In this document: in pieces, positions 437-53,800 of the stretch | Layout: every line of letters starts with the position of its first letter | Numbering within the stretch: position 1 is the first letter of the stretch | Assembly: GCF_002113885.1 (NCBI RefSeq) | Contig: NW_018404676.1 | Coordinates: forward strand, 255,453-319,452 | Reading direction: 5' to 3' | DNA from: Mizuhopecten yessoensis | Taxonomy: Eukaryota | Length of the DNA: 64,000 bases | Notes under the pieces: model-generated | The model's input: the letters and a program-made list of their open reading frames with translations, nothing else | Told to the model about the DNA's origin: nothing | The model's database searches: none | Made by a program: the position numbers and the translations under genes

Positions 437-3400
437 GTAAAAGCATCTCTGCAATCATTAGAAGATGAGAAAGTCACATTACAAAACAAGGTCGACATAG
501 AGATAGAATGTCGACAGGAGATGGAAGGTAAGTTGGATATTGAAATGTTACATGTTATACTGTATACCGGGACATTTTTGCTACAGTATAACTTTTTGCC
601 TTTTTCGCCCTTCTCGATGAGGGGAATTCATCAAGACAGCGAATTTTAGTACACAACTAAACTTCACTAGAACAACAAGGATTTTATTGGCAAAGGGAAA
701 ATATTTGACAAGGCAAACATTTCCTGGTATACAGTAAGACTTTTCTATTCTAATAACTGATAAATATTTTTGAAGTTTGAAGCAACATTTATACATAATT
801 GAAATTGTGCTAATATTAATTTATCAATAAGTTTCCACTTGTAACTGATAAATATTTTATAAAATATGTGAATTTTTTAAAATATCCTTTGGAATCCCAC
901 AAAAATGTGAACAACACTATCTGAATCCAGTGGGCCCACTGTGTTTAATGGAAAACAGCAGTCTTGTTTTTGAAATGCACTTCTATTTTCTAGGATCTGT
1001 ATATAGATTTCACTTGCAGATTTTTCATTATTACATTTATGCCTGATTCCAAGTAAATATCACCATGGCAAGCTTGTAAGACATGTTAAGTGCATAAACA
1101 ACTAGAACACTTCAAATGAATTGAAAATGGCCGTTTTTATTAAAAACGACATGTTTATATAAAAACTTTATCTTTTAAAGTTTTTGTCCAATGTACTTAA
1201 AAGTCTTAGATGGGGTAAGAAAACGCCCCTTTAAGAAGTAATAATCATATTGAGAAGGAGGCAAGAAGGGGAGGTGGTGGGTAATAAAATTCACTTAGAT
1301 ATTTTTCAAAATTAGATCATGATGTAAAAAGAAGGTACACACCTTGTTCCTCCATCATCTTCAGCAGGCTAGTGACCTAGGGTCAGCTAGTGCACATACT
1401 TATATAGGGTGCTAAAAATAGCCACAAATTCATACGACTTTTGACCTTCTCACCTCCTACTAATGGTCAGCGTCCGCTCATATCAATCATAGATACAACA
1501 AATACAGTACTTTAACATTCATGATATTGAAACATAATAAAAAACAAAGTATTACTAGGACATTCATAAATTACATTAAACCAGGTTTAATTTGTATATG
1601 TACATGAAATGAATATATCCATGGCATATGGAATTCTGATTTTTTCATCAAATTCATTCTCAGTATATTATGAATGCATTGGATACTTATAATTTGAAGA
1701 GAATTGGAGAAATATCTTTTTTTGGAAATATATCTTTATAATGATAATAAAATATCACGTGTGTTATTACTCTTCCAGAACAAATTGCCAGCCTCCAAGC
1801 AAAACTGGAGAGTTTCCAAGCTGACAAAATGAAAGCTGATCGACAGAGTCATGATGCTCAGACCAAACTTAATGTTTTGACCCACTACTTCAAAGAGAAA
1901 GAGGTTCAATTACAACGGTAAGTATTATAAATGTGAAAGATACAATAGTAAAGTTAAGATCATGGAAATTCTGGGGAAAGTTCAGTTTTGGAAAAGTTAT
2001 AAATCCAGGGAAGCAAAAATCATGGCAAAGATTGGGAGAGAAAACACATGTTCTGGCGAGTATTTATAGTCCTGGTAATGTGTGGGCAAATCAAATCTTT
2101 GAAAAGTCAAATCCTGGTAGAATATTGCAAATAATTTCATGATTAGTTTGATGTTGAAAGATAATCTCATGACAGTCATGTCAGAAAAGGTATTAGTTTA
2201 GTTAGTGAGAGATAGTATTAGTTAAGTTAAAGAAAGCTAAGTCCTGGTAGTATTATGGACAGTAAGGTGTTGGTAAGGCTGTAAAGCCAATATAATTATT
2301 AAGTTGAAGAAAGAAAGTCTTTGGTTGGTAAAGGTAAAGAGAGCAAAATCCTGGTAAATTTAATAAGAGTTAAGTATACAATAAGATTAGGAAGAAAACA
2401 TCTGTTGCTAAACTGGAAATGTAAACTCTGTGAGAGCGATGATGCACATTTTTTAAATATCTGATAAATAGCTATTGATAAACTGAAACAAACTGTACAC
2501 TCATAATCAATTCATGAATGCTTTTATTACCTAATTGTGTTTTCTGTCATTATAGAGAGTTAGGTGAGCAGGAAGCATTGAAGAAGCAGAATAAGAATAG
2601 ACTGGAACATGCAGATGAGAGGAGTAAAATGGTGGAAGCAGAGTTAGAAACCTACAGGTACTGGTAGTGTAAAGTTTATTATCCCTCTGGTGGAGATTGG
2701 AGGTGATAATTATGCAATGTAACTGATGTGTGTTTGTCCATGCCGTCTCCATTTGCACACAATAACTTTAGTTCCCATATGTGCCTATCATATTGAAAAT
2801 TCATAAACAGCTTCCTTACTGAAAGTGTGTTTCTGGTATTAAGGTCATAGATCAAGGTCACTGTAAGTATAAATAGAAAATTGTTTTCTGCACAATACCT
2901 TGAGTTACTGTTAAAGATAATACTTGATATCATACACAGCTTACTAAAACATGTACTGAAAATGCAATTGCTTTTCAGGTCCTTTGGTCAAAGGTTAAAA
3001 TCAATGTTTCTATAACTTGAAAATTGGTGTCCCCATAAGAATTTGAGTCCTTGTGGGCAATTGAAGCTCAATTTTCTTACACTGCTACCTTTATATTGAA
3101 AGTGCTACTTGTGATTGGTTTTCAGGTTTGAAGTTCATAGATCAAGGACATTGTTACTATAAATAGAAAACAATATTTCTAAATAATGACTCTTAAATGG
3201 CCCACAACACTTCAACTTTGCACACTGCTTCCTTACTAAAGGTGCTGAAAGGCCGCTGTTCCTGTAATTAAAGCAAGCATTACATCTATTCTTACACTAT
3301 AAAAATACCTCACTATTAAGAATCAAGTGATAACAACGTCCTTGACTTCAGCACTGAGTGGCTGGATAAGTGTCACTGAGGATAGATATGTTGGAGTTAG

Positions 3401-6400
3401 ATACCTACAGGTACTACTGGTTCATTACTTATTTAGTAATGAGACAGTACAGGTAGTGTTAGATACCTACAGGTACTACTGGTTCATTACTTATTTAGTA
3501 ATGAGACAGTACAGGTAGTGTTAGATACCTACAGGTACTACTGGTTCAATACTTATTTAGTAATGAGACAGTACAGGTAGTGTTAGATACCTACAGGTAC
3601 TACTGGTTCAATACTTATTTAGTAATGAGACAGTACAGGTAGTGTTAGATACCTACAGGTACTACTGGTTCAATACTTATTTAGTAATGAGACAGTACAG
3701 GCAGAGTTAGATACCTACAGGTTCTACTGGTTCAATACTTTATTTAGTAATGAGACAGTACAGGTAGTGTTAGATACCTACAGGTCCTACTGGTTCAATA
3801 CTTATTTAGTATTGAGACAATACAGGTAGGGTTAGATGCCTACAGGTACTACTGGTTCAACACTTATTTAGTATTGAGACACTACAGGTAGGGTTAGAAC
3901 CCTACAGGTACTACTGGTTCAATACTTATTCAGTAATGACACAATACAGGTAGGGTTAGATACCTACAGGTACTACTGGTTCAATACTTATTCAGTAATG
4001 ACACAATACAGGTAGGGTTAGATACCTACAGGTACTACTGGTTCAATACTTATTTAGTAATGAGACAATACAGGTAGTGTTAGATGCCTACAGATACTAC
4101 TGGTTCAACACTTATTTAGTATTGAGACAATACAGGTAGGGTTAGATACCTACAGGTACTTCTGGTTCAATACTTATTTAGTAATGAGACAATACAGGTA
4201 GAGTTAGATACCTACAGGTACTACCAGTTCAATACTTATTTAGTATTAAGACAAAACAGGTAGGGTTAGATACCTACAGGTACTACTAGTTCAATACTTA
4301 TTTAGTATTAAGACAAAACAGGTAGGGTTAGATACCTACAGGTACTACTGGTTCAATACTTAATATGTAGTATAAAGAGACAATTTAGGCAAATTAGGTT
4401 TCTGCAGGTTTATTTTAACATGGTCTTGTTTTAAACTGGTTCAAAACAAATTTAACACTATTTACATATTTTGGTTTTACTGTATTTTAGGAATAATCCT
4501 GGAGGGGGCCATGGGGTCGGGCCATTGACCCCTCAAAACTGAAATTAAGCCATCTGTGTATCAGTTTTCTTTGAATTTTACATAGAATGGTCCCTCTTAA
4601 TTTGATGTTGACAAAAAATGCTGAAAATGGCCGAATGCTCTCAAATTCTAGGATTTCCGCTGTATCTTATATTTCCATAGGATGTAACTTTGACTTGAAC
4701 CCTATTCTGATTTTTTTCACTTCAGGTCACAAGCTGAAGATTTAAAGAAGGAAATACTTTCAGCAGAGAGAGATTTTAGGTCTCAGGTAAGTCAATACAT
4801 TGTCAAGTTGTTAACAGCCTTGTTTGCTAATAATTGTTTGTTTGTTAAGAATTGTTAAGGAAAGTAATAAAAACAAAGTTTGTTCCTTCGCCACATCTCG
4901 TTAGAAATTTTAATATAATCCTAATGTAGGGTTTCTGAACTGTTACTTATTTATATTTTAAGCAATTAAATTATTAGAAGATGAGAACAAAATTGTGTTG
5001 AACTTTAATATCCTTGATATTTTCAGATTGCAGCTAATGAAAAGAAAGCTCATGAAAATTGGGTAAGCATATAATGATCCAATTATTTCACTTAGACGAG
5101 AGTCAGTGATTAAGAGCATAATTTCACCTTTGCTAAAAAGAAATCTTCAATCTCTATTCCAACTGTTAGTACCCTTATTGAGACCATGCTGATGTTAAGC
5201 TTTGTGGTGTGAATGCCTTATTGATATGGTATCTATGGTGAAAAGGTTTTTAGCTCACCTGGCACGAAGTGCAAAGTGAGCTTATGCCGTGNCTCACTTT
5301 GATGCACCACATTCACAATAATGAATATAATTTGTCCATTGTTGTGATATCATTTCATAGGGAAGTGTATGATTCCAGTGTAATGTTTCACTGCTTTCTC
5401 TACACAGCTGGCGTCTCGGACAGCGGAGAGAGAACTGAAGGAGGCACGGCATGAGTCTACAGTGTTACGGCAGAAGTGAGTAATGCGATACCAAAACTCA
5501 TTTTAATGGAATTTGGTTCTGTCTGATATTTAATGACAACCAGTATTTCTGATAACTTATAATTACTACTCTTTGCTATGAGAGAAAATAAGGTGATTAT
5601 TTATATAAATTTTATCTTGCGGTTTTCATTGAATTTCTGATTTAACTTAAAAAAAACCACCTACATTTTATAATATCATATTACATCATATAGCGAAATG
5701 TTAGCACAAAATAACTCATGATGAAGTAGGTAAAGTGATTTGGAGTTAGACATGGTCTAATTTTAGACTGTCTCTCTATTTTTGACAGATTGACAGATCT
5801 TGAGAGGCGACTACACCATGGGCCAAGTGGGCTCCTACGGCCCCTCCCCACGCGGGGCATGCCACCACCAGGTAGATAATCTCAGTGGGGTGTGTTATTG
5901 GACATTCAATTATGCAGGGTTGTCTCTACATCCTTTTTAGATACACTTGAAGCATTTATTGGTTTGAGAAAAAAACATTTTGTGATGTTATTGTGTGATT
6001 TAAATGGATATGAGGAACATTGTGACCATTTAAAATTAACACATATCCATCATTTACCAAATATCCCTTAGGATCATGTCATCATTTAAGTACTAAGTGT
6101 TGGTAGCATTTTAAGAGTTGCTCTTCCTTGTCCACAGGCATGAATGGGCCACCTCCTCTACCCCCAGGAGTAGACAGACCAGGACCCCCGGGCATCAGGT
6201 AGGCTGTACTCACCTCCATCTCTATTTCTTGTCTAATAAAATCTGGCTATGTGTGAAGAAGACCAAACATTGTATGAATGAACATGCTCAATGTCAGACT
6301 AAACAGTTATTTGCACACAACTTTTGTGATATGATAAAAACTGGAAATACAAACTACTCTATGTGCTTTATAGATTGGTGCAATAATTTAACTCCTTTCT

Positions 6401-20300: not shown

Positions 20301-23300
20301 TGTTTTTTATTCTCCGAAACTGGATTTTTAGCTCTGCTTATAGAACGGTTCAAGTGTGTTCGTTTATCGTGGAAAATTTCTGTGCCTCACGTACCGTTTC
20401 AACCGGGATATGCGAATGTAGCCTTAATTTAAACTGGAATTCTGGCACTTATCTTACTATCAAATACCTTTAAAAAATACATGACAAATTTGAGTTGAAT
20501 GATAATTTTGGAAGGGACTTTGATAGTTACTAAATAATAAAACAAATAAATAAATGGGGGAGAAACAATGATATGTGCACTGTGCAGTACATTAAGAGAC
20601 ATTGTGATGTGTATAACAAGATTTCTTAGACGTCTAACACCAAACATTACCTGACAGTTGGAGAGTGGATCAGTTTAGCCATGACCATGACTGCTTGTAC
20701 AAACAGATGTCTAACACCAACCATTACCTGACAGTTGGAGAGTGGATCAGTTTAGCTGAGACCCTGACTGCTTGTACAAACAGATGTCTAACACCAACCA
20801 TTACCTGACAGTTGGAGAGTGGATCAGTTTAGCCATGACCATGACTGCTTGTACAAACAGATGTCTAACACCAAACATTACCTGACAGTTGGAGAGCGGA
20901 TCAGTTTAGCCGAGACCATGACTGCTTGTACAAACAGGTGTCTAACACCAAACATTACCTGACAGTTGGAGAGCGGATCAGTTTAGCCGAGACCATGACT
21001 GCTTGTACAAACAGATGTCTAACACCAAACATTACCTGACAGTTGGAGAGCGGATCAGTTTAGCCGAGACCATGACTGCTTGTACAAACAGCTGTCTAAG
21101 ACCAAACATTAACTGACCGTTGGAGAGTGGATCAGTTTAGCCGAGACCATGACTACTTGTACAAACAGATGTCTAACACCAAACATTACCTGACAGTTGG
21201 AGAGCGGATCAGTTTAGCCGAGACCATGACTGCTTGTACAAAAAGATGTCTAACACCAAACATTACCTGACAGTTGGAGAGTGGACCAGTTTAGCCGAGA
21301 CCCTGACTGCTTGTACAAAAAGATGTCTAACACCAAACATTACCTGACAGTTGGAGAGCGGATCAGTTTAGCCGAGACCATGACTGCTTGTACAAAAAGA
21401 TGTCTAACACCAAACATGACCTGACAGTTGGAGAGTGGATCAGTTTAGCCGAGACCCTGACTGCTTGTACAAACAGATGTCTAACACCAACCATTACCTG
21501 ACAGTTGGAGAGTGGATCAGTTTAGCCGAGCCCATGACTGCTTGTACAAACAGATGTCTAACACCAAACACTACCTGACAGTTGGAGAGTGGATCAGTTT
21601 AGCCGAGACCATGACTGCTTGTACAAAAAGATGTCTAACACCAAACATGACCTGACAGTTGGAGAGTGGATCAGTTTAGCCGAGCCCATGACTGCTTGTA
21701 CAAACAGATGTCTAACACCAACCATTACCTGACAGTTGGAGAGTGGATCAGTTTAGCCGAGACCATGACTGCTTGTACAAACAGGCGTTTGTGTTGTCTA
21801 TAACTAAGCCCTATCAATTCTCTCTTCCAATCATCACTAGGAACAATCTGGAAAATGAAATAGCAACAATTACTTAACTGAAACAGAATAGATCAGAATC
21901 AAATTTCATCAAATGATTTATTATAATGTAATAAGTTAGACAATATTTGTTTTGCTATTAATGAAGTAGTTGGCTTTTATAAAAGTTATAAAATCTGACA
22001 GATAATTAAAAATTCAAACTGTTTACATATAGTGGTAAGATTACAACCTTGAGATCAGTGTACATATCTTGGAGGGCAGCCAGTCCTATGGGGAGACAAG
22101 GGTAGGAAAAGTATCCTTCAACCATAGAGAGTTCTACTTCCCTTGTACCCTCACGTGATTGCGACCAGGCTAGTACACGCGTTATGGCAGATTCTTGTCT
22201 GGAGTGTCTCTCTTCACTCCCTTTTATACTCAACTGAAAATAAAGAAACCAATGTGACATGGTATCGAATATTAGTGGGAAAACAAACAGTGTCGTAAAC
22301 TGTGTGTGGGCCGATGGAAACAAATGATATTGGAGAAAGGCTGTCATATCATCAACTGTATGTAGCAACGAACAGTGTCTTATGCCATAAGCACTCAGTG
22401 GAGAAAGAATACTCTATATCAATACAGGGTAACTGTATGTGGAGAAACAGTGTCATGGCATCAACTGTTAGTGGAGAAATAGTATCATACATCATGAACA
22501 GTTTGTTGAGACATTAAGTGTCATAGATCATGAACTGTTAATTGAGGAACAAACAGAGTCATATGTAATAAACTGATAGTGGAGGAACAAAGTTTTTACA
22601 CGATTTCAGAAGACATCAACTCTTAATGAAGAATAAAGAGAGTATCATACAGCATCAACAAATTCTGGCAAAAACCAAATTGTCATCAATGGTTCGTAGA
22701 GCCAGGTGGGTAACAGACTTACCTGGGTTCAGGTAAGGTACACCTGTCGGTGACAGGTAGACTCAGTCAGGTGGGTTACTGACTTACCTGGGTGTTGATG
22801 GTTGAGGTAAGGTACACATGTCGGTGACAGGTAGACTCAGTCAGGTGGGTTACTGACTTACCTGGGTGTTGATGGTTGAGGTAAGGTACACATGTCGGTG
22901 ACAGGTAGACTCAGTCAGGTGGGTTACAGACTTACCTGGGTGTTAATGGTTTAGGTGAGGTACACCTGTCGGTGACAGGTAGACTCAGTCAGGCGGGTTA
23001 CACACTTACCTGGGTGTTAATGGTTGAGGTGAGGTACACCTGTTGGTGACAGGTAGACTCAGTCAGGCGGGTTACACACTTACCTGGGTGTTAATGGTTG
23101 AGGTGAGGTACCCCTGTCGGTGACAGGTAGACTCAGTCAGGTGGGTTACTGACTTACCTGGGTGTTGATGGTTGAGGTAAGGTACACATGTCGGTGACAG
23201 GTAGACTCAGTCAGGTGGGTTACAGAGTTACCTGGGTGTTGATGGTTGAGGTAAGGTACACATGTCGGTGACAGGTAGACTCAGTCAGGTGGGTTACAGA

Positions 23301-26300
23301 CTTGCCTGGGTGTTGATGGTTGAGGTAAGGTACACATGTCGGTGACAGGTAGACTCAGTCAGGTGGGTTACAGACTTACCTGGGTGTTGATGTTTGAGGT
23401 AAGGTACACCTGTCGGTGACAGGTAGACTCAGTCAGGCGGGGTACAGACTTACCTGGGTGTTAATGGTTGAGGGGAGGTACACCTGTCGGGGACAGGTAG
23501 ACTCAGTCAGGCGGGTTACAGACTTGCCTGGGTGTTAATGGTTGAGGTGAGGTACACCTGTTGGTGACAGGTAGACTCAGTCAGGCGGGTTACACACTTA
23601 CCTGGGTGTTAATGGTTGAGGTGAGGTACCCCTGTCGGTGACAGGTAGACTCAGTCAGGCGAGTTACAGACTTACCTGGGTGTTAATGGTTGAGGGGAGG
23701 TACACCTGTCGGTGACAGGTAGACTCAGTCAGGCGGGTAACAGACTTACCTGGGTGTTAATGGTTGAGGTGAAGTACACCTGTCGGTGACAGGTAGACTC
23801 AGTCAGGCGGGTTACAGACTTACCTGGGTGTTAATGGTTGAGGTGAGGTACACCTGTCGGTGACAGGTAGACTCAGTCAGGTAAGATGTGTTGTTGATCA
23901 CCCTCATGTGTCTACACACCAGCACCACACCAGGTCTTACTTCAGGACCAATCAAAGACTACAAATCCAAATCAAATCAAATTGAGCAGTGATTTAACAT
24001 TTATACCATGACAAACCTATATTATAGTACATTACACAGATTTTCTTACAGTATAATTCTGAATCTGCCTGTGTGTGCAAATTTTCTCCTAATCAGACTA
24101 TTTCACGGGGATTAAATTCCACTCAACAGCACCTAGTTAAAATTCCAAAGTCACTGGAAACATCCATATAATGTAATAGGAAGATTCGGTCTTCAAGTAA
24201 GTCAGACATGCACAGTGCAACAGTATAGTCATAGTTTTGTTTACTTTTCAATAAGACCATGTACATGTACATCGGAATGCAGGTTGTTTTTTAATTATTG
24301 TTTAAAAAAAATGACCAATTCGACAGGCTGATAGGCAGATAGCTGTCTTTTGAAGATTACGGAGGAGCAATATCCAATTCAAAGCCAGTCTAATTTACCT
24401 TTACACAACCAAGAGATTCTTTTGAACATCAAAGGATCAAATTAATCTCCTCATTTCATCCACAAGGTGCACAGGGCGCACATTGAGTCTAAGAATTTGT
24501 AATGACGTCACATATTCCGGGGGTGCAGAGAGCGTAAGTGAGCGTTTCCGACGTCAAATGAGGCTTCGCGACTAGAATACCCTTGAGTATCGAGGATAGG
24601 ATTTACCAAGATATTTTTTCATGTCTGTATTTCAAGATATTTGCTTTAATACATGTCTGTCCATGACCAGGATATTCTACCTTAAGGGTTAAGAATTGTG
24701 AGTAAAATTCTTGGCAAAGCCCCTAGTATTATTCCAATTCAAAACCCACTTGGTACAAATCTACACACATATGAAAAAAAAAATTTTAAACAGTAAAGAA
24801 TATTGTAATATCTCTAGTATAAAATTGGTCATTACTGTGATTCAAAAGTTTTCAATTTCAAAATGTACCATTTATGAGGAATACAATAATTTGCTTACCT
24901 CTGCTGCTCTGAACATTTGTACTATGAATGTCTTTTTGCTGGAGGCGTCCTTCAGGTGTAGCCAACGACGAACCCAGAAACCCCCACTGTCTAGGCCAGC
25001 TTTGTCTAAAACACAAACACAACCCACTCATCACAGTTTTAGTGAATATATTTCAAAATTATAAAAATGCCTTTCTTCCCTGAATTCTTACAAATTCTCT
25101 CAAAAAAGTGTATTTACAGTACATTATTCCTTGTGTTCATTTAAACATTCAAAAGGTTATTATACAGTTGCAAATTTCTAATAATACATTTACATATACT
25201 CAATGTGTTTGGAAATATTTTTAATTGTAAACAAACCTTTTTAATCAAAGGAATGATGTCCTACTCTTACTCATTCATGAATATTTATCTTAGAAAGAAT
25301 CCAAACAACTTTATACATTTTGTAACATATTTTATGTTTCAGCCTCTCTACAGGAGTCCCTTTTCATTGAAAAATGTAATTCACATGTGCTTGTTCAATG
25401 ATAGTATGTTATTGTGTAGTATGCTCCCTTTTTATTACGTTCAGTGAACATGTGTACTTCATTAGTTACTGTGGCGATCACACTAAGTCAGAAGGTTCAG
25501 CAATTTATGCCCAATATAGACCACACAACAAGAATTACTGATTGGTCACACTTAGGCTACATTCGCTTATCCCGGTTCAAACGGTACGTGTGACACAGAA
25601 ATATTCCGCGATAAACGAACGCACTTGGACCGTTCTATAAGCAGAGCTTAAAACGCAGTTTTGGAGAATAAATAATAATGTATTAAGAATATTATGCCCT
25701 TCTTTCATGCGTCCACTGAATTACATAAGGTATCTTAAAAACTACATGTGGCTTGACATTATTTTAGAAAGAAATAACGCAAACTAGCAATAACCAGCAT
25801 TTATAGTTTCGGTCAGGTATGTCTGGACCCCCAATCTACATGTGCCAAATTTTCCTGAGGTCAGCCTTGGTCCAGATCTGTGCCTGTTGTGATAGTGCTC
25901 CATTTATTTAGGTAACAAAGTACACTTAAATTGCTTTCACAAAGGATTTTAAAGATCCTGCAATTATTTCTGCCATCGTTTGATAAAAATATGGCTTTAC
26001 CACAATTGCTCTAATTTGTTATAAGATTCTGCACATAAAACACTTTACATAGGTCATGCAGCTAGCATTAATGAATGGCCACACTAACTTGTAATAAGGT
26101 CTCGCTCGTAACGTCCCACGTAGGTCACACAGCCCACAATATCACAGATGTAGTTGTCTGGAATGGATCTGCAAATCAAAACGGTGGTTATATATAATTA
26201 GGTACATGTTAGGAAAAATAAAACATCTCTTATTAGTAATAAGAGATGTTTTATTTAAATGTTTTTGTGTTAATTTTTATAAAGTAATTTATTTTATAAA

Positions 26301-29300
26301 TATTCACACTAAAACATTTTGCCAGCAGACTTAATATTGTTGTTTTATCAGTTCATACTACAAAATGCTGAAATATGACAGATGTTCTTGGGTATATCTT
26401 TTAAGAATGCCAATAAGTGTTTATTCCCCCCCCCCCTTTTTTTTTATCAAATAGCTCTAGATACTTTTAGAATGAGTGGTTTTATCAACACCTATTAAAA
26501 GTTGTCAATATTAGGTATATATACTATGAGCTGACTGATTGACTGTTTAATCCCATTGCAGCATAGTTATGGTCTTAGAGACGGCAACATAATTTAGCTG
26601 ACTTGATTGTGAACCGTGACAATAGTCTGGATATAAATAAGAAAAAATCCCCATTTTCAGTGTGATGAGAACCTATCAGAACTACATATTTATTGTTAGC
26701 TTTATTTACCCTAGCTGTTTGCGTGTGACAAAGTTATACTCCAGATCTGGGAGACGAATGTTTTTAGGTACAGCCGACAAAGCCAGTATCTGTATCTCAC
26801 TTCGGGGATGGTGTGGGTTCATGTTGAGGTCGATGTCGTAATACTGTAAGTTTTTGGGTACCTGGATCTCCCGACCACTGCTGTAGTAGCTCTTCTTCAC
26901 TGTGAATCTCCTAATCAATATCACACAGCCTTCCTGCAACCTTCACAAACACAGGACAAAAGATATATAACAAAGCTAGTAAACTGTATTGTTTCTACAT
27001 GAACAGAGAGATAAAACAGATTCAATTAAGCATTTACTTTCAGATAGCATTCAGTCATAGTAAATGTGAATGCCATTTAAATACGAATATCAAATGGAAT
27101 TCAAATAATCTATCTGAACAATTCTTCAATTATATCCTGAACAAATCTTTAATAGTATTCTGAATAACCACTATAAATAGTGTTCTGAATAACCACTATA
27201 AATAGTATTCTGAATAACCACTATAAATAGTGTTCAGAATAACCACTATAAATAGTGTTCTGAATAACCACTATAAATAGTGTTCTGAATAACCACTATA
27301 AATAGTGTTCTGAATAACCACTATAAATAGTATTCTGAATAACCACTATAAATAGTATTCTGAATAACCACTATAAATAGTATTCTGACAAATAGTTGTA
27401 AGTGTTTTGCACAAAGCTTTGATAAAAAAATTACAAACATTTGATAGTACATTTGTATTCTAAACAAACTTTCATATTTTCATAACACGCATTGGGAAAT
27501 ATTTTCACAAACCATTGGTAGCTATCTGTATAAACCTGAAGTGGTATGCTGCACAAACTTTGGGCGGTATTCTGAACCTAATTGGCAGTATTCTGTATAA
27601 ACTTTTAAGTTATATTCAGCATATACTTTCAGTGGTAGGCTGCAAAACCTTTTGAAAGAATTCTGTAAAAACCAACTGCAGTGTTCTGTACAAACCTTTG
27701 ATAATGTTCTGTACATAGAGCATTCCATAAAACCATATTACACACTCCAGTCTCATCACAAACACTAAAATGGGCCTGAAACATAGAAAGCATGTCATAA
27801 ATTAATAAAGCAGTTTCAACATTGTTATAACTGTTACCTTGTAAGGCACCACATTTTTTCATTTTATACCTGATTTTTTGTATCTAAATTTGTTCTGATG
27901 CTGATTAAGGGTCGAAACATCTGAAGAGGGCTGGCCATCACCTGATGACGTCAAATGAGGCTTCGCGACTAGAATGACAGCAGTGACGGACTACAAGTCA
28001 AGGATGTCACAAGATGCAGAATCACCATCATCTGTAAGCAATCATCACACACCTCATGTGTCGAAATTGGTCAATGTTAACTTGGATTAAAGCCGTTATA
28101 TCCAGCACGACGTTGTCATGGTCATCTTTACCTATTGATATATCTAAGTATATTTATAGTCACATGAATTTGATGTTAAATGCTGATTACTATGGTATCA
28201 ATATTTTACGGTTAAAACAACATACAGTTAAACCCCACTTCGTCAAACTCGGTTTATTCCAATAACCCTCATTCGTCGTACAGTTAGTTTGGTTCCGACC
28301 GAGTTGGTACATATTCTTTGTAAAGTAACCCCGGATTAGTCGAACCGCTATTCCTCAAACACCCCATATTCCTCGAACAAAAATTTGTCCCCGACACAAC
28401 ATTGTCATAGTGTAAATCCTAACTATTCGTCGAACAGGTGTGATCACCTGTCACGCCTGACAGATATTTTACCTGTGTATCACAGGTACAGGCACTGCTG
28501 CCGGCATGTCTCGAGGCACAGGCTGCGGTCCGCGCTCATCGTGCTTATACAGGTGTCTGCTGGACGTCAGATAATTAAAGGATTAACGGCAGTATCATTA
28601 AGTAACTGGACCGTTACCCTGTTGTAGCTGCATTATCATTTTTCGTGCATATTATTTTTTCCAGATGATGTTTTGACATCGATGATTTGGTGGAAGTGTT
28701 AATTCACTCGGTGTGTAAAACCATATTTTGGTATGGCAATATAAGCGGAATTCACATAGCGGAATCCGACCAAATTTAAAGATATTCAAACTTGATTAAG
28801 TCGTGATTGTTAATTTCGTTTTCAATCAACATTGTGATTACAAGGATTCAAGATTTTCTTCATTTCATAATGATTGAAGAGTTCCTCTTGTTTTGATATT
28901 TCTTAAACTTAACGCAGACGATTACAGTATGGCGGACTATGTCAAAACGATAAGTACACTATACATGCAGCTTTTTAATTTTATTTATTTTCTTCATACC
29001 GGTGGCTATATGTTTTTATTGTTAAGCTATTTTAGATCTCATAAAATTCTGTCATCTTGATTAAACTTCCTTTTTCTTCTATCATCTACTATTCGCGATA
29101 GTTGCATTGCTCATACTGTCTGTTGTCCCACCTATTAAAAAAATGACGATGTCGGTCGAACCTCGGATTCGTCGAATACCATGTATTCCTTGAACTATTG
29201 ATTTGGATCCTATGAGTTCGAGTAAACAGGGTTTCACTGTACATATTATCATGCCTAGAATAAAAAAATTGCTATGTCAATTCTGATACACTATATACCT

Positions 29301-32300: not shown

Positions 32301-35300
32301 AAATCTTTCACATATTTGACCACTGTGATCTTGAAAGTAGGTCAAGGTCATTTTAATGAGGAAACTTAATAGCACTCCATCCAAGGTACCTACTGGTCAA
32401 ATATCATGACCATAGGTCATACAGTGCTTCAGAAGAAGTTGACGGCCGGACGACGGATGCTGCAGTACGGCATAAGCTCACATGGCCCTTCGGGCCAGGT
32501 GAGCTAAAAACTAGAAAAAGATTATGACACATTATCCAACTTTCCTCCTTAAGAGTGAATCAAGGTAATTTAACTTGACAGCCCTTCACTTAAAACAAGA
32601 GGCCCAAGGGCCTTAGCGGTCACCTGAGTTATATCATAGGTACTGGTAGCTTTATTTTATTGTTTAGATGTGATGTGGAAATCAGCATGTAAACTAAGTG
32701 AAATACAATACTTGTCATGTCATCAATGGATAAGAATTTGAAAATATTGGTAAATGTTCCCTTTGGGGCCCCGCCCTAGCCCCTGGGGATGGGGCAGGAA
32801 TCCNNNNNNNNNNNNNNNNNNNNNNNNNNNNNNNNNNNNNNNNNNNNNNNNNNNNNNNNNNNNNNNNNNNNNNNNNNNNNNNNNNNNNNNNNNNNNNNNN
32901 NNNNNNNNNNNNNNNNNNNNNNNNNNNNNNNNNNNNNNNNNNNNNNNNNNNNNNNNNNNNNNNNNNNNNNNNNNNNNNNNNNNNNNNNNNNNNNNNNNNN
33001 NNNNNNNNNNNNNNNNNNNNNNNNNNNNNNNNNNNNNNNNNNNNNNNNNNNNNNNNNNNNNNNNNNNNNNNNNNNNNNNNNNNNNNNNNNNNNNNNNNNN
33101 NNNNNNNNNNNNNNNNNNNNNNNNNNNNNNNNNNNNNNNNNNNNNNNNNNNNNNNNNNNNNNNNNNNNNNNNNNNNNNNNNNNNNNNNNNNNNNNNNNNN
33201 NNNNNNNNNNNNNNNNNNNNNNNNNNNNNNNNNNNNNNNNNNNNNNNNNNNNNNNNNNNNNNNNNNNNNNNNNNNNNNNNNNNNNNNNNNNNNNNNNNNN
33301 NNNNNNNNNNNNNNNNNNNNNNNNNNNNNNNNNNNNNNNNNNNNNNNNNNNNNNNNNNNNNNNNNNNNNNNNNNNNNNNNNNNNNNNNNNNNNNNNNNNN
33401 NNNNNNNNNNNNNNNNNNNNNNNNNNNNNNNNNNNNNNNNNNNNNNNNNNNNNNTAATTTTCCCTTTGGGGCCCCGCCCTGGCCCCAGGGGTTGGGGTAG
33501 GAATCCCAATTTTACAATTTTGAAGCCTCATCTACCAAGGATGATTCTGACCAAGTTTGAAAAAAATCCATCCACTGGTTCTTGAGAAGAAGTTGAAAAT
33601 GTAAAAGTTTACGCACGACGCACGACGGACGAAAAGCGATTGGAATAGGTCACTTGAGCAAAGCTCAGGTGACCTAAAAATTGTAGACAAATGTATGATC
33701 CATATGACATAAATAAGATGAGATTAATTTTTATTTTCATTCCAGCTAGCTACAGGCCAAAAATCAGAATTCTAGGACAGGATAATCTTAAGAATATATT
33801 TAAATTTTTCTCCACATTTTACCATAACCATTAATGGATTCCACAGTCATTTATTTGAAGAAAAAAAAACCCACAGTATTTTATCCCAGCAAGCTTAAGG
33901 ACAGATGTCAAGAACTGAAACAAGTAATATATATAATAAAGATTGTAACACATCTGACCATGGTTAACTTTGATGTGGGTATAGGTTGTTCATAAAGTAT
34001 TTCAACAGAGTTGATAACTCTTTATTCCAGTAAACTACAGGCCAGGCCAAATCGGTTGTTTGAAAATTTCAACACATTTTAGCCATGTGACTTTGTGGTT
34101 ATAACCCAGTAAGTCAATGTTATTTATTTTCATCAAATTTGACAGCCTTACGATTTGTCTAGTTACATGTCATATTTCCTTACCCTAGGTCTTAAGGTCA
34201 TTAAGAACTCATATGAAGGAAAAAGTTGACACTGGAAAGAAGGACAATGGACAGGCAGATGGACAAACAATATGTTAAAAATAAGATATATATTCATAAT
34301 GACAACCTGTCTGTTTTGGATTTCTGTTGATAATTTTGGATCTGCTACAACTTTGAGTTTATGTACATTGTCTGTGACAGTCAGCTGGTAAACATCAATG
34401 TACATAGTATCCAGGCCAGTCTGAGAAGTGTGCTGCGGATCTACCATGTACCGATCTATTTTCAAAACCTGCAAAATATATCATATTCATTAGTGGTAGT
34501 TCATTTGTATGCATACAAAATTATGAGAGGGTTGTTGAAGAGATTAGCAAAAAATTAATCTATTTAGAGATAAATTTCATACTATTTTTACACTTACAAA
34601 ATGATTGTGACTAAGGTAAGCTAAGAAGACAAATAAAGTGTCTAAGGGTTGGCTCGAAATAATGATAACATATAACCCATGGACTAAAATATGTTGACTT
34701 TTGCAGGTACAACTATGTATACAGGTACTGTCAATCTCATGATCTTTTTGTTAATATGATTTACTAGGACATTAGTGGACACAAGCATTGCTGCCTCTAT
34801 ATCTACGTCAATATATTTTGAAATACAACGTGGTAAACATAAAATAAGCCTATACATAAGATGCTGTATGATCGTACTTCAACTCCAGATCTTTCCAGAA
34901 TTCGTCCAAGTTTTTCTCAAAGTCAAATACGTTACGAGATGAAATAACATCTTGCGAGAGACTATTCCAGATATCAATTATTCTTTGAGTAAAGTAATGT
35001 TTTCTAATATTTGAATTAAATGTTGGATAGTTTCTTATTTCAATTATTAGTAGACCATCAGATGTGTTTAATTTAACTTACATACAGAATTACAAAATAA
35101 TATCTTTTTATCCTTTTAAATGATTGTCATGATTTGAAGTTCCTCTGGCCCTGACACCAGACTTAGACCTCATATCTATCAGATTGGGCACCACAGCGCA
35201 TATGGGTAATAATCCTGCCTTTGGGTAACATATTTGTATGTTATGGTTGAATGCACTTCGAATCTACTTTCACTATCCTATATAAAAAATCCAAATTTTG

Positions 35301-41182: not shown

Positions 41183-41854
41183 GTTGATTTCTCATGTGAC
41201 GTCAGAGCAGCGCACTTGTTTCGTAGACCTATTCAGATTCCCCCTCCAAAGACCAAGGGTACATGCAACTTTTACAGACTCTTGTGAGCATAAAGATATA
41301 TGATAAATAATAAATCCTTATATTTGTTTCTTGGAATGGGACTTTAAATTCACGGAATACTGAGTAATATTGCTTGGTAATGTATAAAGCTTATCGATAG
41401 TACATGAGATTGTGTTACAGTTGGTATGTTTTTATCTTGACGAGAAGAAAGTATCAATTATAAACGATATTTATTAAGGATACGTTTGGATCAATTAATT
41501 GTCTAACTTGATTTTTTTATTTAGTTCTTTCATAGCAAGTTCAGCACCTGATTGTTTCATTACACGCATGTTAGGCTGTGGAAAACGATCAATTAACTAA
41601 GTAATGAGGTTTAATATGTCATTTTTTATTATCTTGAGAAGTAAAAAAGCTTTTTCTGCTGCTTAAGTGTGCACAACAAAGGTTATCAACAGCTGTATTA
41701 TATAATTTCATCAAGTCTGAAAAGCTCAATGGGAATTCAATGTGCTAATGACTCTGCAAGCTCTTTTGACATGAAGGCGCGAAACCTCAGAGCATCCCGG
41801 AATACCTCGGATATTATTAATAATTGAGTAGTTTCGAATAGTATTTGTTTGAAT
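41183..41854. promoter_or_regulatory. Putative bidirectional promoter region between the homeobox gene and KIZ; contains CRE palindrome TGACGTCA at 41197-41204
   Basis: Divergent ATGs at 41182 (-) and 41855 (+), only 672 bp apart. Confidence 0.55.
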
Positions 41855-47800: not shown

Positions 47801-50800
47801 AATTATTCAAAGAAATGGAGGATTGTCACTTGTAAAATATTGTAATTTGAAAATGTTTCCCTAATTCTTTTTTTGTGCTTGTTTCTAATATAGAAGCCAA
47901 AAACATCCTCCATTTATGCCAACATATCACAAGTAATGCGAAATCCCACTGATCAGGAGACAGTCCAACAACAGAGTCAACCCAGGGCTGTTCAACAACA
48001 GGTCTCGCATGTCCCTGCTGAAAGGGAGACAACTGCCTACCAACACAGTGTGCCTGATCAGGTTACTGATGTTAGCTTCAGTGATGATATTGTGGAGGAA
48101 ATGGTGCAGCATCCCCAGCCAATACAGAGTGTACGAATTGGTCAACAAGTGCACAAACCAGTGCCAGAGTCTCCAGGTAAGGTCAGCGAGTACACAAACT
48201 AGTGTCAGAACCTCCAGGTAAGGTCAATAATACACAAACTAGTATCAGAATCTCCAGGTAAGGTCAACAAGTACACAAACTAGTGTCAGAACCTCCAGGT
48301 AAGGTCAACAAGTACACAAACTAGTGTCAGAATCTCCAGGTAAGGTCAGCGAGTACACAAACTAGTGTCAGAACCTCCAGGTAAGGTCAATGATACACAA
48401 ACTAGTGTCAGAATCTCCAGGTAAGGTCAATAATACACAAACTAGTATCAGAACCTCCAGGTAAGGTCAACAAGTGCACAAACCAGTGCCAGAGTCTCCA
48501 GGTAAGGTCAACAAGTACACAAACTAATGTCAGAATCTCCAGAAAAGGTCAATGAGTACACAAAAGCTTTTGAGTGATGTTTCATGAAAAGACTACAACT
48601 TGTACTGTTAATATATTCTGGCAAGTTATCCATAACGTTCAACCACTTCTTTATTTATGGGAAGTGAAAGAAACCATTTACCAGCTGGAAAAATCCTGGA
48701 ATTTGAGAGCAGTGGGCCATTTTCAGTCATTTTTAGTCAATATCAGAATTAAGAGGGGCCTTTCTATGTAAAATTAAAAGAAACTTGAAAAATTGAGGGG
48801 TCAATTTCAATTTTGAGGGGTCAATAGCCCCCTCCAGGATTATCCCTGTACCAGTACTTTGTGTAGTTTTGAAAAAAACTGACATCATCAGCAATGCTCC
48901 GACCAGTTGTTTGTCATCTAGTAAAACATTTAGATCTGAAGGTACTCTACATTAAAACTGCATTTGAGATGGCTTCCTTGAAAGACAATGGTTACAGTTG
49001 TCTTCTCTGTTACACAGATATATCCCAATCCCTGTCTGGACCAATGGAGCCTAACCCGGTTGATGAAGTGGGTGGAGATGAAGTCAGTGATTTTGGAGAT
49101 GATGATTTACCGTTAAGTACGAGTCAGACAGGACCAGATCAGCCTCAAAAGATAGTGACCCATGACCAGGTATCTCCTCCCAGCTCTCCGGACGCCACGC
49201 CTCGGGATCGTCCAATACAAACCGCTGTGACAGGAGGTGATAGCAGCTCTAGGTTAGTGTTACTCCTCCAGATGTCTCGTGTCAGCCAGTCACTTCATTT
49301 ATCCCTACATTTCACTTTGTTTATACATACATCGTATTTACGGAAATACATGTATAATCAAAACTTTTATAGCATATGCTTTATAAATGGTTGCTAATTT
49401 GCAGTCCTGCTACCCCATCTCCGGAGCTACATCTAGATGGACTGGTGCGTCTGATCACTCATGTCCAGGCTGACTTCCCAGAAGCTTTATCTCTGGAGGG
49501 ATACTACCGTTCTCATCGTCCTTCCGCCTCCGACCGACGTGATATCATGCAGTAAGCCATCATTTCCTTTTTGATAAAATATAACATAAAACATACACAT
49601 GATGTATATATATTGTTTTAATGGGTTTGCTTCATTTATCATATTGATTAGTAGTTTTTTAGTGTGTCAGTACTGAATAGTTGTTTAATTTCGCAAAGCC
49701 AATATTTCACAGTTGTCCCAATCAGAGCTAGTTTGCAGGGGTTAGATTTTGTACAATATGGCTAGATATAATTATCCGCTCATGATGGTACTTTTGTATT
49801 TTGGTGATGGGATATATTTTACAGGTGTTTTGTGAAAATAAAGTAAAGTGCGATATTGAATTGTTGTTTTATCCTCATTATTCGGCAGTACATGTGTAAA
49901 TAGATGTTTTCTTTTTCTGTCTGTAAATATATATGTTCACAGAGATTATAATTCAGGGAATTCATTTTCACTGTATATTTCACACTATCTTTGGTGACCG
50001 CGAAATATGGCGAACTTAAATTCCGGTGACTATTATCATCTATACAGTAATGAGGCGTATTATATGAACTGTGTACACAACTTGTTTTAACCTTGTAGTA
50101 AAGGCAACAAGGGCATCCCGATGCATGATCAGGATGCTGAGAAGATCAGCATGGTGCTGTTGGAACAGCTCCCCCTGGTGGTGAGGAATTTGTCTCCCAA
50201 GGGCCTCCTACCAGACTCTGTTCTTGCTGGCAATGTAGACAGCATCACAGAGATGAGAATCAGGTAAGATATTGTAGACGGAGACATATGTCAAGTGACT
50301 CGGATCATACAGTGGATTTTATATTATTTAGTGGGTATTTTTTAATCTTTAATTTTGAATTGTTATCAATATGAGTTACTTATCAGTTCCAATAAAGAGG
50401 ATTTCTCTTTGTGATTGCATCTGTTAGTTTAAAATATATGAAACATCAAGGCTTCACTTTAAACTTTAACTTAAATAATTGTACTGTAACTTATTTGAAT
50501 AATAAAAGACACCTTATATTATGTTAGATCTGATAATGTTCATCAGACAGGAATTACAGTTATATGAACACATACTTTAATACAAACAAAAAACAGGTTG
50601 TCATCTTCAATTCTAAGGACTCATCGTCTGGTTTAGGTTAAACACTCATACAGGTTGAAGGTCAAACTGCTACACATTCCATTAGTGTCTTGCTCTGTGA
50701 ATACTTTGACAAAAGATTGCTGGTTTAGTAGAATGTGTTTCTGTGAGTTGAGTTTGTTCCACATGTAGAATGGCCCTGCCAGAAGCTGCTCAGCCCCTGT

Positions 50801-53800
50801 GGGACTGTTTGTTTGATCACCTGTCCCAGTTAGTGCGAAACAAAGTCATGGTAACTAAGGAAGTGGCCGCCGTGTTTGTTCCTAGTTTGGTGGCCGACTA
50901 CTCTCCGTACCAGGACAGGGTAATCAGACTGATATTTTAACCAGTACAATATCAAATAATTTTCACAACTTCAAATATTAAGAAAACAAAAGATTACATG
51001 TTTATATTGATCATAGTTCAGTACAATAATGGCTTAGTTTGAATCTTAAGGAATAATTCTTTAAATATAAAAACAGACTTTGTACATTTTTTTGTGGTAT
51101 TTCACTAATGTTTTAAATAGGCAAGATCAGATAAGCATACTTTGTTAGCCAAAAATGTAACATACTTTTTTTTTCTTTCATGTATTTTCTCCAGGCATAC
51201 AACCTTGTAATCCGCCTCCTTGAAAAGTTTGATGAGTATAGACAGGCGGAGAGTGAGGGGATGACTCCCAGAGATACCATGGACAGCATGAGGAGTAGTC
51301 TGGGAGGAGGTGAGAAGGGTTGTGGGATCAAAAATGCAGTAGTCTGGGAGGGGGTGAGACGGGTTGCGGGGTAAAAAATACAGTTGTCTGGGAGGGGGTG
51401 AGACGGGTTGTGGAGTAAAAATTACAGGAGTCAGGGAGGAGGGGAGAAGTGTTGGGTACAAATTACAAAAGTTAGGGCGGAGGTGAGAAGTATTATGGGG
51501 TAATAATCATGATAGTCTAGCTGGAGGTGAGACGGGTTGTGGAGTAAAAATTACAGTAGTCAGGGAGGAGGGGAGAAGTGTTGGGTACAAATTACAAAAG
51601 TTAGGGAGGAGGTGAGAAGTATTATGGGGTAATAATCATGATAGTCTAGCTGGAGGTGAGACGGGTTGTGGAGTAAAAATTACAGTTGTCTGGGAAGGGT
51701 GAGACGGGTTGTGGGATCAAAAATACAGTTGTCTGGTAGGGGGTGAGACGGGTTGTGGGATCAAAAATACAGTAGTCTGGGAGGGGGGGAGACGGGTTGC
51801 GGGATAAAAAATACAGTTGTCTGGGAGGGGGTGAGACGGGTTGCGGGATAAAGAATACAGTGGTCTGGGAGGGGGTGGGACGGGTTGCGGGATAAAAAAT
51901 ACAGTTTTCTGGGAGGGGGTGAGATTGGTTGTGGGATAAAAAATACAGTTGTCTGGGAAGGGTGAGACGGGGTGTGGGATCAAAAATACAGTAGGCTGGG
52001 AGGGTGTGAGACGGGTTGTGGGATCAAAAATACAGTAGTCTGGGAGGGGGTGAGACGGGTTGCGGGATAAAAAATACAGGTGTCTGGGAGGAGTTGAGAC
52101 GGGTTGTGGAGTAAAAATTACAGTAGTCAGGGTGGAGGGGAGAAGTGTTGGGTACAAATTACAAAAGTTAGGAGGAGGTGAGAAGTATTATGGGGTAATA
52201 ATCATGATAGTCTAGCTGGAGGTGAGACGGGTTGTGGAGTAAAAATTACAGTTGCCTGGGAAGGGTGAGACGGGTTGTGGGATCAAAAATACAGTTGTCT
52301 GGGAGGGGGTGAGACGGGGTGCGGGATAAAAAATACAGTTTTCTGGGAGGGGGTGAGACGGGTTGCGGGGTAAAAAATACAGTTGTCTGGGAGGAGTTGA
52401 GACGGGTTGTGGAGTAAAGATTACAGTTGTCTGGGAGGGGGTGAGACGGGGTGTGGGATCAAAAATACAGTAGGCTGGGAGGGTGTGAGACGGGTTGTGG
52501 GATCAAAAATACAGTAGTCTGGGAGGGGGTGAGACGGGGTGTGGGATCAAAAATACAGTAGTCTGGGAGGGGGTGAGACGGGTTGCGGGATAAAAAATAC
52601 AGTTTTCTGGGAGGGGGTGAGACGGGTTGTGGGATAAAAATTACAGTTGTCTGGGAGGAGGTGAGAAGGGTTGTGGGATCAAAAATGCAGTAGTCTGGGA
52701 GGGGGTGAGACGGGGTGTGGGATCAAAAATACAGTAGTCTGGGAGGGGGGGAGACGGGTTGTGGGATAAAAAATACAGTAGTCTGGGAGGGGGGGAGACG
52801 GGTTGTGGGATAAAAAATACAGTTGTCTGGGAAGGGTGAGACGGGTTGTGGGATCAAAAATACAGTTGTCTGGGAGGAGTTGAGACGGGTTGTGGAGTAA
52901 AAATTACAGTAGTCAGGGTGGAGGGGAGAAGTGTTGGGTACAAATTACAAAAGTTAGGGAGGAGGTGAGAAGTATTATGGGGTAATAATCATGATAGTCT
53001 AGGTGGAGGTGAGACGGGTTGTGGAGTAATGATTGCAGTACTGTATGCGCAGCTGTAGTGAGAAAAGTCATGACAGTCTGGGCAGAGTGTGAAAGGTTAG
53101 GACAACATTCTGGGGATACTGGTTGGTTTGTAGGTATCTCGATCAGCCCACAGGCAGTGAGCAAGAACTTTTACTTTACTATTTTAAGCCTATTTACTAA
53201 TTCAAACCCACAATGGGGATGAGAACCTTCCTTTTATTGGTGTATGGTTTATAAAATGGTTGTTACTCAAATTTTAGAAAAACAGGACTTTCTCAGCGAC
53301 AAAAGTCACTGATTATCAAAGAAGTTCTACCCAGTGATCCTTTAGCTTTGAAACAGAGATGCTGTCTTTGTTGTACATGTGTATCCAATTGTTGTGAATT
53401 GTGTTTCAGTTATTATTGGTCCAGAGGGCAAAGTACAAGGTAAATGACCAGACCAATGTGTCTGGTTTGTATGTCTAGCACGCTTGGTTAGCTGTCCATC
53501 CGCCCTTTGTACATACATATTCAGTCTCATCAGCTGATAAGCAGACACAGGAACAATACTGTGAGATTAATATGGTGCTTGACAACATGCCAAGCTTCCA
53601 CCAACTTAACTTATTTAACACAATCAGCATTGTGATCACCGAAGCTATATAACATGGCAATGAAACATCCTCAGAAACTCATTTCACTGGTCACCAACAT
53701 TTGTTTTCAATCATTTGCCGTCCATTGAGCATTCTGTTTGTTCACCCAAGGCATGTTAGCCAATTGATAACTGAAAATAGTGTTTAGATATTTTTTATAT

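What the first reader, a model, noticed from the sequence alone, without database searches (positions are those of the whole stretch)
2641..53030. Recurrent 'donor-echo' arrays: minisatellites built from an exon end plus its own 5' splice site, in three unrelated genes
Seen: five young arrays (TANGO1 3394-4362, 62 bp; RADX 20631-21785, 77 bp; RADX 22705-23881, 74 bp; KIZ 48140-48563, 41 bp; KIZ 51294-53030, 44 bp) and one decayed array (RADX 27110-27716, 23 bp). They share no sequence with each other, yet each unit straddles the local exon/intron junction and is amplified into the downstream intron. The result is about 10-40 tandem near-consensus donors per young array with the GT mostly retained. 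Six of roughly 37 visible donors are affected, while junctions make up a tiny part of the DNA. Inference: a systematic process is tied to 5' splice sites, either mutational (transcription pausing, R-loops, repair slippage) or selective (U1 snRNP loading that reinforces exon definition or telescripting, or tunable unproductive splicing). This is the best candidate for an undescribed system in the window.
Basis: partly seen in the sequence, partly recalled or inferred. Interest (0 to 1): 0.9.

Follow-up and report, generated by a model that had tools for sequence, protein, structure and literature searches.

The report
Splice-donor "mirage" minisatellites in scallop genes
In three Yesso scallop genes, several introns open with tandem copies of the preceding exon end plus its splice donor; these repeats are real, but they are a kind already known from amphioxus ("mirages") and from human genes such as F7, and nothing here shows that they have a function.

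Summary
All six arrays exist as described (TRF for five; a 23-nt periodicity for the decayed one). The window is Yesso scallop.

- **Exon ends checked.** RNA contigs from three studies (KIZ), the species' own annotated RADX protein and a Pecten homologue show that five arrays start with the true exon end and donor. The first donor is the one spliced. The TANGO1-like array copies its junction (21/22 nt) but lies 737 bp downstream, behind a spacer holding a dispersed repeat.
- **Not an undescribed system.** Boundary minisatellites are published as "mirages" in amphioxus and in human F7, IFI6, CBS, LMNB2 and PDGFA, where downstream copies stay silent or nearly so.
- **No sign of function.** GT columns vary as much as the rest of the units, no unit length is a multiple of three, and no contig uses a downstream copy.
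- **New here.** Echoes sit at 5 of 19 verified donors, against one weak single-copy echo among 19 acceptors. The RADX exon-10 array is shared in register with Ylistrum and, shortened, with Pecten, so it is old. The exon-12 donor gained arrays with different breakpoints in Yesso and Pecten.

The scan had already reported the same thing in at least six other stretches of this genome.

The parts
2556..2657 (+). TANGO1-like coiled-coil exon; its end plus donor (GT at 2658) is the parent of the 62-bp unit
   Evidence: Open frame closed by a stop 7 nt past the GT; phase continues into the next exon at 4726. Gene named by synteny with a Pecten SH3_2 gene of 1757 aa, and the last exon is 93.5% identical. 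No RNA check.
2663..3393 (+). Spacer between the parent junction and the array; contains a dispersed repeat
   Evidence: Internal ~145-nt repeats; 70-79% matches to 59675-59831.
3394..4362 (+). 62-bp array whose first unit repeats the junction 22-mer 21/22
21729..21847 (-). RADX exon 12; the authentic donor is the first of 15
   Evidence: P0030 and P0001 alignments.
20628..21784 (-). 77-bp array: about 56 nt of exon tail plus 21 nt of intron head, x15
   Evidence: 14 further copies of the 24-nt junction.
23824..23958 (-). RADX exon 10; perfect CAG|GTAAGT donor
22705..23881 (-). 74-bp array: 57 nt of exon tail plus 17 nt of intron head, x15.6; homologous to arrays in Ylistrum and Pecten
27696..27775 (-). 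RADX exon 6; donor CAAAG|GTTTGT
27114..27716 (-). Decayed 23-bp donor array (27395-27716) with a young 25-bp secondary array (27151-27388)
47894..48176 (+). KIZ exon; the first donor is used
   Evidence: Joint 48176->49018 in four runs.
48140..48564 (+). 41-bp array: 37 nt of exon tail plus GTAA, x10.4
51195..51309 (+). KIZ exon; the first donor is used
   Evidence: Spliced contigs end at 51309 and run on to an exon beyond 53799.
51294..53024 (+). 44-bp array: 16 nt of exon tail plus 28 nt of intron head, about x40, with 129-bp higher-order blocks
32804..33454 (.). Assembly gap, inside RADX intron 2; not part of any array
   Evidence: the flanking exons are contiguous in the homologue.

Best explanation
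These are boundary minisatellites of the 'mirage' / F7-IVS7 kind, and they are by-products of repeat turnover, not a regulatory device.

1. Birth (inferred). A segment spanning the end of an exon and the first 4-28 nt of its intron was duplicated in tandem, probably by slippage or unequal exchange between short imperfect direct repeats.
2. Silence (shown for splicing). The spliceosome joins the first donor, the one next to the exon body, so the mRNA is unchanged and the downstream copies are ordinary intron.
3. Turnover (shown by comparison). Once two copies exist, unequal exchange keeps expanding, shrinking, homogenising and re-amplifying the array. It therefore looks young (94-95% identity) although the locus can be old.
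4. Donor/acceptor asymmetry (inferred). At an acceptor the authentic site would be the last copy, so upstream copies would compete. At a donor the authentic site is the first copy. I read this as the likely reason arrays are seen at donors much more than at acceptors.

Whether births are also favoured at donors is unresolved. I put that at about 30%.
For: Arrays and exon ends.

First donor used: the joint 48176->49018 and the exon end at 51309 appear in RNA contigs from 3 studies. NCBI's protein for this species joins the first donor at all three RADX arrays.

No constraint on the copies:
- GT columns carry 6 variant cells against 7.0 expected.
- In the 44-bp array about 10 of 39 copies have lost the GT.
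- Unit lengths are 62, 77, 74, 41, 44 and 23, so none is in frame. The only array inside an exon (21 bp, 18208-18469) is in frame.

Age and turnover:
- The Yesso 74-bp array aligns without a gap over 240 nt with a 74-bp x3.6 array at the same donor in Ylistrum balloti. Pecten maximus has a derivative 25 nt shorter, of 49 bp.
- The exon-6 donor has a decayed 23-bp array in Yesso and a 46-bp array in Ylistrum.

Background: 17% of the window is tandem arrays.

Precedent: upstream donor used and copies silent or nearly so (PMC1557585); 'mirages' do not disturb splicing (PMC3087553, PMC3902484).
Against: - A uniform neutral birth model predicts about 0.6 donor-straddling arrays in this window, and 4-5 are seen.
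- Within RADX, all three short-unit non-coding arrays sit at donors.
- The exon-12 donor carries arrays with different 5' and 3' breakpoints in Yesso (-56..+21) and Pecten (-7/-13..+29), while Ylistrum is single-copy. That looks like recurrent birth at one site.
- Contigs cannot show rare use of downstream donors.
- Copy numbers are not confirmed by long reads.
Confidence: 0.75

Rival explanations
1. Donor-linked mutational hot spot. Something about 5' splice sites (transcription pausing, R-loops, a chromatin boundary, or a constrained 'master' unit that keeps re-seeding the array) raises the birth or survival rate of minisatellites there. The arrays still have no function. This reading is compatible with the best explanation and adds a rate bias to it.
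For: - Echoes at 5/19 donors against one weak single-copy echo among 19 acceptors (Fisher 0.046 for 5 vs 0, 0.18 for 5 vs 1).
- Poisson P = 0.003 to 0.0004 for 4-5 donor-straddling arrays.
- Different breakpoints at the same exon-12 donor in two genera, with a single-copy state in a third.
- Donors with arrays are slightly stronger than those without (mean 7.6 vs 6.6 of 9, one-sided P = 0.054).
- Other stretches of this genome were flagged for the same thing (unchecked notes).
Against: - The window was picked after the fact. With P(>=3) of about 0.02 per gene-dense window, several such windows are expected among some 400 by chance.
- Two of the three RADX sites are shared by descent, so recurrence across species is partly persistence.
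- The donor/acceptor asymmetry can come from selection alone.
- There is no common hairpin signal: z-scores are 0.28, 1.24, -0.32, -1.29, -3.05 and -0.99.
Confidence: 0.3
2. Selected function. The donor copies load U1 snRNP to reinforce exon definition or suppress premature polyadenylation, or they provide tunable unproductive splicing.
For: - Many near-consensus donors per array.
- The exon-10 array has persisted across three genera.
Against: - GT is no better kept than other columns.
- A quarter of the 44-bp copies have lost it.
- The decayed array shows loss without replacement.
- Ylistrum has no array at the exon-12 donor.
- Period and copy number differ freely between species.
- No spliced contig starts from a downstream copy.
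Confidence: 0.07
3. Assembly artefact. The arrays, or their lengths, are produced by mis-assembly of repeats.
For: - The window has an estimated gap and comes from a scaffolded assembly.
- DNA runs hold only 0.69-0.81 of the sampled words of 47001-57000.
Against: - Contigs from independent runs cross the ends of both KIZ arrays: 48481-48646, 52879-53799 and 52881-53222.
- The same architecture sits at the orthologous donors in two other species' assemblies.
- Only the copy number remains unverified.
Confidence: 0.03
4. Intron gain or new-exon birth by tandem duplication (Rogers model), or banks of cassette micro-exons.
For: - The 44-bp unit carries both ...ACAG and GGTGAGA motifs.
- This model was proposed for amphioxus mirages (PMC3087553).
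Against: - The arrays fill only part of each intron. For example, the 41-bp array takes 387 of the 841 nt of its intron.
- The same introns exist in all three scallops, and at the exon-12 donor of Ylistrum without any array.
- No contig includes a unit as an exon.
Confidence: 0.03

Closest known systems
Amphioxus 'mirages' (Adh3, globin BflGb6/BflGb9, troponin C, PGBD5): PMC3087553, PMC3902484
   Same: Minisatellite-like tandem duplications of an exon-intron boundary; units of 10-160 bp; splice signals reiterated; normal splicing undisturbed; concerted evolution within the array; several loci per genome; mechanism of origin stated to be unclear.
   Different: Here the host is a mollusc and the density is very high (5 of 19 verified donors in two genes). 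All cases in this window are at donors, whereas amphioxus has both boundaries. One array is shown here to be shared in register between genera.
Human boundary VNTRs: F7 IVS7 37-bp, IFI6 (6-16) intron 2, CBS IVS13, LMNB2, PDGFA intron 4 (PMC1557585)
   Same: The first monomer spans the exon-intron boundary, so identical donors follow the authentic one. The most upstream donor is used (in IFI6 and CBS two proximal copies are used as well).
   Different: The human cases are isolated loci. In F7 the exon part of the unit is only 4 nt, against 16-57 nt here. Functional tests (50 minigene constructs) exist for F7 and none exist here.
Intron gain by tandem duplication of an AGGT-containing segment (Rogers model, as cited in PMC3087553)
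   Same: A tandem duplication that includes a splice signal and leaves the mRNA unchanged.
   Different: Here the introns pre-exist and the array occupies only their 5' part. No new intron or exon is seen.
U1 snRNP decoy or telescripting sites (established knowledge, not tested here)
   Same: Many U1-complementary sites lie within an intron.
   Different: There is no evidence of constraint on the sites or of any effect. This is a resemblance only.

Membership tests
Exon-intron boundary minisatellite ('mirage' / F7-IVS7 type) | Head-to-tail array of units of roughly 10-160 bp | tested here: met
   TRF; lag-23 periodicity.
Exon-intron boundary minisatellite ('mirage' / F7-IVS7 type) | The first monomer contains an authentic exon end and its splice site | tested here: met
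   Met for five arrays. The TANGO1-like array copies the junction 21/22 but lies 737 bp downstream, so it meets this only as a displaced copy.
Exon-intron boundary minisatellite ('mirage' / F7-IVS7 type) | The authentic, most upstream site is used; the copies are silent or nearly so | tested here: met
   RNA contigs for KIZ; annotated protein and homologue for RADX. Rare use cannot be excluded with contigs.
Exon-intron boundary minisatellite ('mirage' / F7-IVS7 type) | Length instability or polymorphism and concerted evolution | tested here: inconclusive
   Period and copy number differ between three genera, and units are homogenised within each species. No population or long-read data.
Selected U1-loading / decoy-donor element | Donor positions conserved above the background of the unit | tested here: not met
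   6 variant cells at GT against 7.0 expected; about 10 of 39 copies without GT in the 44-bp array. Power is low.
Selected U1-loading / decoy-donor element | Effect of the copies on splicing or transcript level | not testable with these tools
   Needs minigenes or raw split reads with NMD blocked.
Intron gain by tandem duplication (Rogers) | The duplicated units span the whole intron, from donor to acceptor | tested here: not met
   The arrays end well before the acceptors.
Cassette micro-exon bank | Units appear in mature transcripts | tested here: not met
   No contig contains a unit between exons. Contigs drop rare forms.

The most novel reading that the evidence does not exclude
In pectinid scallops the exon/donor boundary is a true hot spot for minisatellite birth, as the RADX exon-12 donor suggests: different breakpoints in Mizuhopecten and Pecten, single-copy in Ylistrum. 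The exon tail, as first unit, would then take part in concerted evolution with its intronic copies, so that array turnover can write changes into coding sequence. One hint: the Yesso-specific Leu codon in ...QVYLTS... is in the exon and in every unit, whereas Ylistrum's exon differs from its own units.
Probability: 0.25. Interest if true: 0.6.

Novelty: new member of a known kind. Interest (0 to 1): 0.3.

Why it matters
As it stands, the finding mainly warns annotators. About a quarter of the verified donors in these two genes are followed by 10-40 equally good donors. Gene predictors, splice-junction callers and variant callers can therefore mis-place exon ends in scallop genomes.

If the excess at donors holds genome-wide, scallops would offer hundreds of natural F7-like test cases for two questions. 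One is how the spliceosome chooses the first of many identical donors. The other is whether transcription or splicing leaves a mutational footprint on DNA.

Tried and rejected
- **Hairpin-driven origin.** Folding the junction units as single-stranded DNA gave no common signal. Only the 62-bp unit folds unusually well, z = -3.05.
- **Selection on GT.** No excess conservation.
- **Frame rule.** All six unit lengths in the window are 2 mod 3. Pecten has 49 and 36 and Ylistrum 46 and 74, so I treat this as coincidence.
- **Pfam on KIZ and TANGO1-like exons.** No hits. The names rest on synteny with the Pecten Kizuna_N and SH3_2 genes.
- **Orthologous KIZ and TANGO1 junctions in Pecten.** The 10-kb flanks of the RADX locus did not reach them. 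Conserved blocks found by tblastx were only the 5' KIZ exons.
- **Independent Yesso assembly.** P0030 is not on record as a gene product, and its longer isoform X1 matches the window, so it is probably the same assembly.
- **Arrays at 54176, 54907, 58455 and 61664.** I could not tie them to exon ends without RNA. The putative exon end at 61604 shows no clear echo in the 25-bp array.
- **Joined models.** Exons were searched or aligned one by one by reference. A short junction string was built inside one script for the TANGO1-like phase check; its anchor was wrong and its output was not used. The phase was then read codon by codon across the two exon ends from that call's sequence print.
Full report
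**What is there**

Tandem Repeats Finder reports all five young arrays at the stated places and periods. It also reports about ten further arrays that the finding does not mention. Together, tandem arrays cover 17% of the window.

TRF mostly misses the sixth, decayed array. Even so, 27395-27716 shows identity 0.458 at lag 23 and 0.388 at lag 46, above the best of 500 shuffles at 0.392. Three degenerate copies of its core motif cluster there, against 0.41 expected in the whole window. A young 25-bp array at 27151-27388 is a secondary amplification inside it.

The unit consensuses share nothing but the donor consensus.

**Which genome and genes**

A RADX exon peptide found a Pecten maximus RADX-like protein (P0001). 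A search with P0001 found the Mizuhopecten yessoensis protein P0030, which matches the window's exons at essentially 100%. The window is therefore Yesso scallop.

In P. maximus the neighbours of RADX are a Kizuna_N gene, a homeobox gene and a 1757-aa SH3_2 gene. The last exon of that SH3_2 gene is 93.5% identical to 6600-6926.

**The gap**

The gap at 32804-33454 lies in RADX intron 2. The flanking exons (34468-34304 and 31063-30929) are contiguous in the homologue. It touches none of the arrays.

**Are the units really exon end plus donor?**

- **KIZ.** Spliced contigs of up to 2.5 kb, from four runs of three studies, give these exons: 47894-48176, 49018-49252, 49405-49551, 50099-50263, 50769-50919 and 51195-51309. 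The joint 48176->49018 is present in all four runs. The contigs leave the stretch at 51309. So both KIZ arrays begin with the true exon tail (37 nt and 16 nt), and the first donor is the one used.
- **RADX (minus strand).** Fourteen exons were placed exon by exon with P0001 and P0030 and refined to GT/AG. The annotated protein reads ...TEHYQ|RLQEG...TINTQ|LSIKG and ...HSPTV|RCAAPE. These are the first donors at 27696, 23824 and 21729.
- **TANGO1-like.** The exon end at 2657 rests on the frame only. A stop follows 7 nt beyond the GT, and the phase is continuous with the next exon at 4726. Its junction 22-mer recurs 21/22 at the start of the array, 753 bp away start to start. The spacer holds a dispersed repeat that also occurs at 59675-59831. 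This agrees with a later insertion but does not prove it.

**A systematic scan**

For all 19 verified donors and 19 verified acceptors of RADX and KIZ, I searched the adjoining intron for the 24-nt junction.

- Five donors have echoes far beyond the null: 24/24 with 14 copies at or above 19/24 in each RADX array, 24/24 with 9 such copies, 23/24 with 31 such copies, and 19/24 once.
- No acceptor has an array. One acceptor (18797) has a single 17/24 copy 1.2 kb upstream.
- Fisher's test gives 0.046 for 5 vs 0 and 0.18 for 5 vs 1.

With 16 arrays and about 35 donors, a uniform seed model expects 0.59 donor-straddling arrays. Seeing 4-5 has P of 0.003 to 0.0004. That figure is not corrected for the window having been chosen because of this pattern. 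At P(>=3) of about 0.02 per window, several such windows are expected by chance among roughly 400.

**Signs of function**

I found none.

- GT columns carry 6 variant cells against 7.0 expected from the array means.
- In the 44-bp array about 10 of 39 copies have lost the GT.
- No unit length is a multiple of three, and the 41-bp copies carry TAG.
- No contig splices from a downstream copy, although contigs drop rare forms.
- The one array inside an exon, the 21-bp array at 18208-18469, is in frame and encodes a 7-aa repeat that is also present in Pecten.

**Comparison with other scallops (RADX only)**

- **Exon-10 donor.** Ylistrum balloti has a 74-bp x3.6 array that aligns with the Yesso array over 240 nt without a single gap, so period and register are the same. 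Pecten maximus has a 49-bp x5 array that is the same unit minus 25 nt. This array predates the split of the three genera. Its 95% internal identity in Yesso reflects homogenisation, not youth.
- **Exon-6 donor.** Ylistrum has a 97%-identical 46-bp x6.9 array starting at the donor. It looks like a dimer of the ~23-nt unit that is decayed in Yesso, and Pecten keeps one decayed echo.
- **Exon-12 donor.** The Yesso unit runs from about -56 to +21, and the Pecten 36-bp x31 unit from -7/-13 to +29. Ylistrum has a single-copy junction whose intron head is homologous to the Yesso head. Different breakpoints on both sides argue for two separate births at one donor, although remodelling of an older array cannot be excluded.

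**What is known**

A full-text search found the F7 paper. [quoted passage not shown] Its 50 constructs show that the most upstream donor wins and that the copies are functional but silent.

Earlier notes of this scan pointed to amphioxus 'mirages'. I checked this in PMC3087553 and PMC3902484: tandem repeats spanning exon-intron boundaries, at either boundary, that do not disturb splicing and whose mechanism of origin is unknown. I found no paper describing them in scallops.

**Reading**

The arrays are mirage-type boundary minisatellites. The steps are:

1. Birth by tandem duplication across the boundary.
2. Silence, because the first donor is used.
3. Long persistence through unequal exchange and repeated re-amplification.

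The steps shown are exon ends, first-donor use, lack of constraint, and shared ancestry of one array. The inferred steps are the duplication mechanism and the selective filter against acceptor arrays.

The excess at donors and the double birth at the exon-12 donor keep a donor-linked rate bias alive, at about 30%. A selected function is unlikely, at about 7%.

The same pattern had already been reported by this scan in at least six other stretches of this genome.

Noticed in passing
window 18208-18469 (-): A 21-bp x12.5 array lies inside RADX exon 13, in frame, encoding HSSNTAG/NSSNTAG heptads. The Pecten protein has fewer copies. NCBI isoforms X1, X2 and X3 of the Yesso protein (853, 839 and 813 aa) differ in length here; the window carries the 14 extra residues of X1.
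   Followed up: partly
window: units of 62, 77, 74, 41, 44 and 23 bp: All six donor-array unit lengths are 2 mod 3 (chance about 0.004 for one shared class). The orthologous arrays in Pecten (49, 36) and Ylistrum (46, 74) break the rule, so this is probably coincidence.
   Followed up: yes
window 23824-23880 vs L003:10010-10060: The Yesso-specific codon change in the exon-10 tail (...QVYLTS..., where Pecten has V and Ylistrum I) is present in the exon and in every array unit. In Ylistrum the exon (I) differs from its own units (V-type). This suggests sequence exchange between exon tail and array, or recent re-seeding from the exon.
   Followed up: partly
L001:18815-19418 and window about 20039 (-): In Pecten, a 40-bp x15 array ends 100 bp upstream of the RADX exon-13 acceptor. 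Its unit holds a gapped copy of the exon head (CCATGT..CAGAAAC). In Yesso, a single 17/24 copy of the same acceptor junction lies 1.2 kb upstream. These are possible acceptor-side echoes.
   Followed up: partly
window 48690-48848: A short element in the KIZ intron has contig depths in the hundreds to thousands in all four runs, many variant contigs and loose ends on both sides. It is an abundant, expressed dispersed repeat.
   Followed up: no
window 15091-15861 (-): A 257-aa open frame downstream of RADX looks like a reverse-transcriptase fragment of a retroelement. This is by eye only and was not searched.
   Followed up: no
window 41754-42043 vs L002:4184-4473: A block of about 290 nt between KIZ and the homeobox gene is conserved with Pecten in all six frames. 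It is therefore probably non-coding (promoter or UTR).
   Followed up: no
window 58455-59366 and 61664-63069: Two more large arrays have units with donor-like motifs (AAGGTAAGA; CAAGGTGTG). A putative exon end at 61604 lies 60 bp before the second, with no clear echo. Their relation to exons is unknown without RNA.
   Followed up: partly
L001:17007-17092 and 18451-18547: Further copies of the Pecten 36-bp donor unit lie 2-3.4 kb deeper in the same intron, separated from the main array by a 158-bp repeat array. The original array has been split by later insertions, as proposed for the TANGO1-like array here.
   Followed up: no
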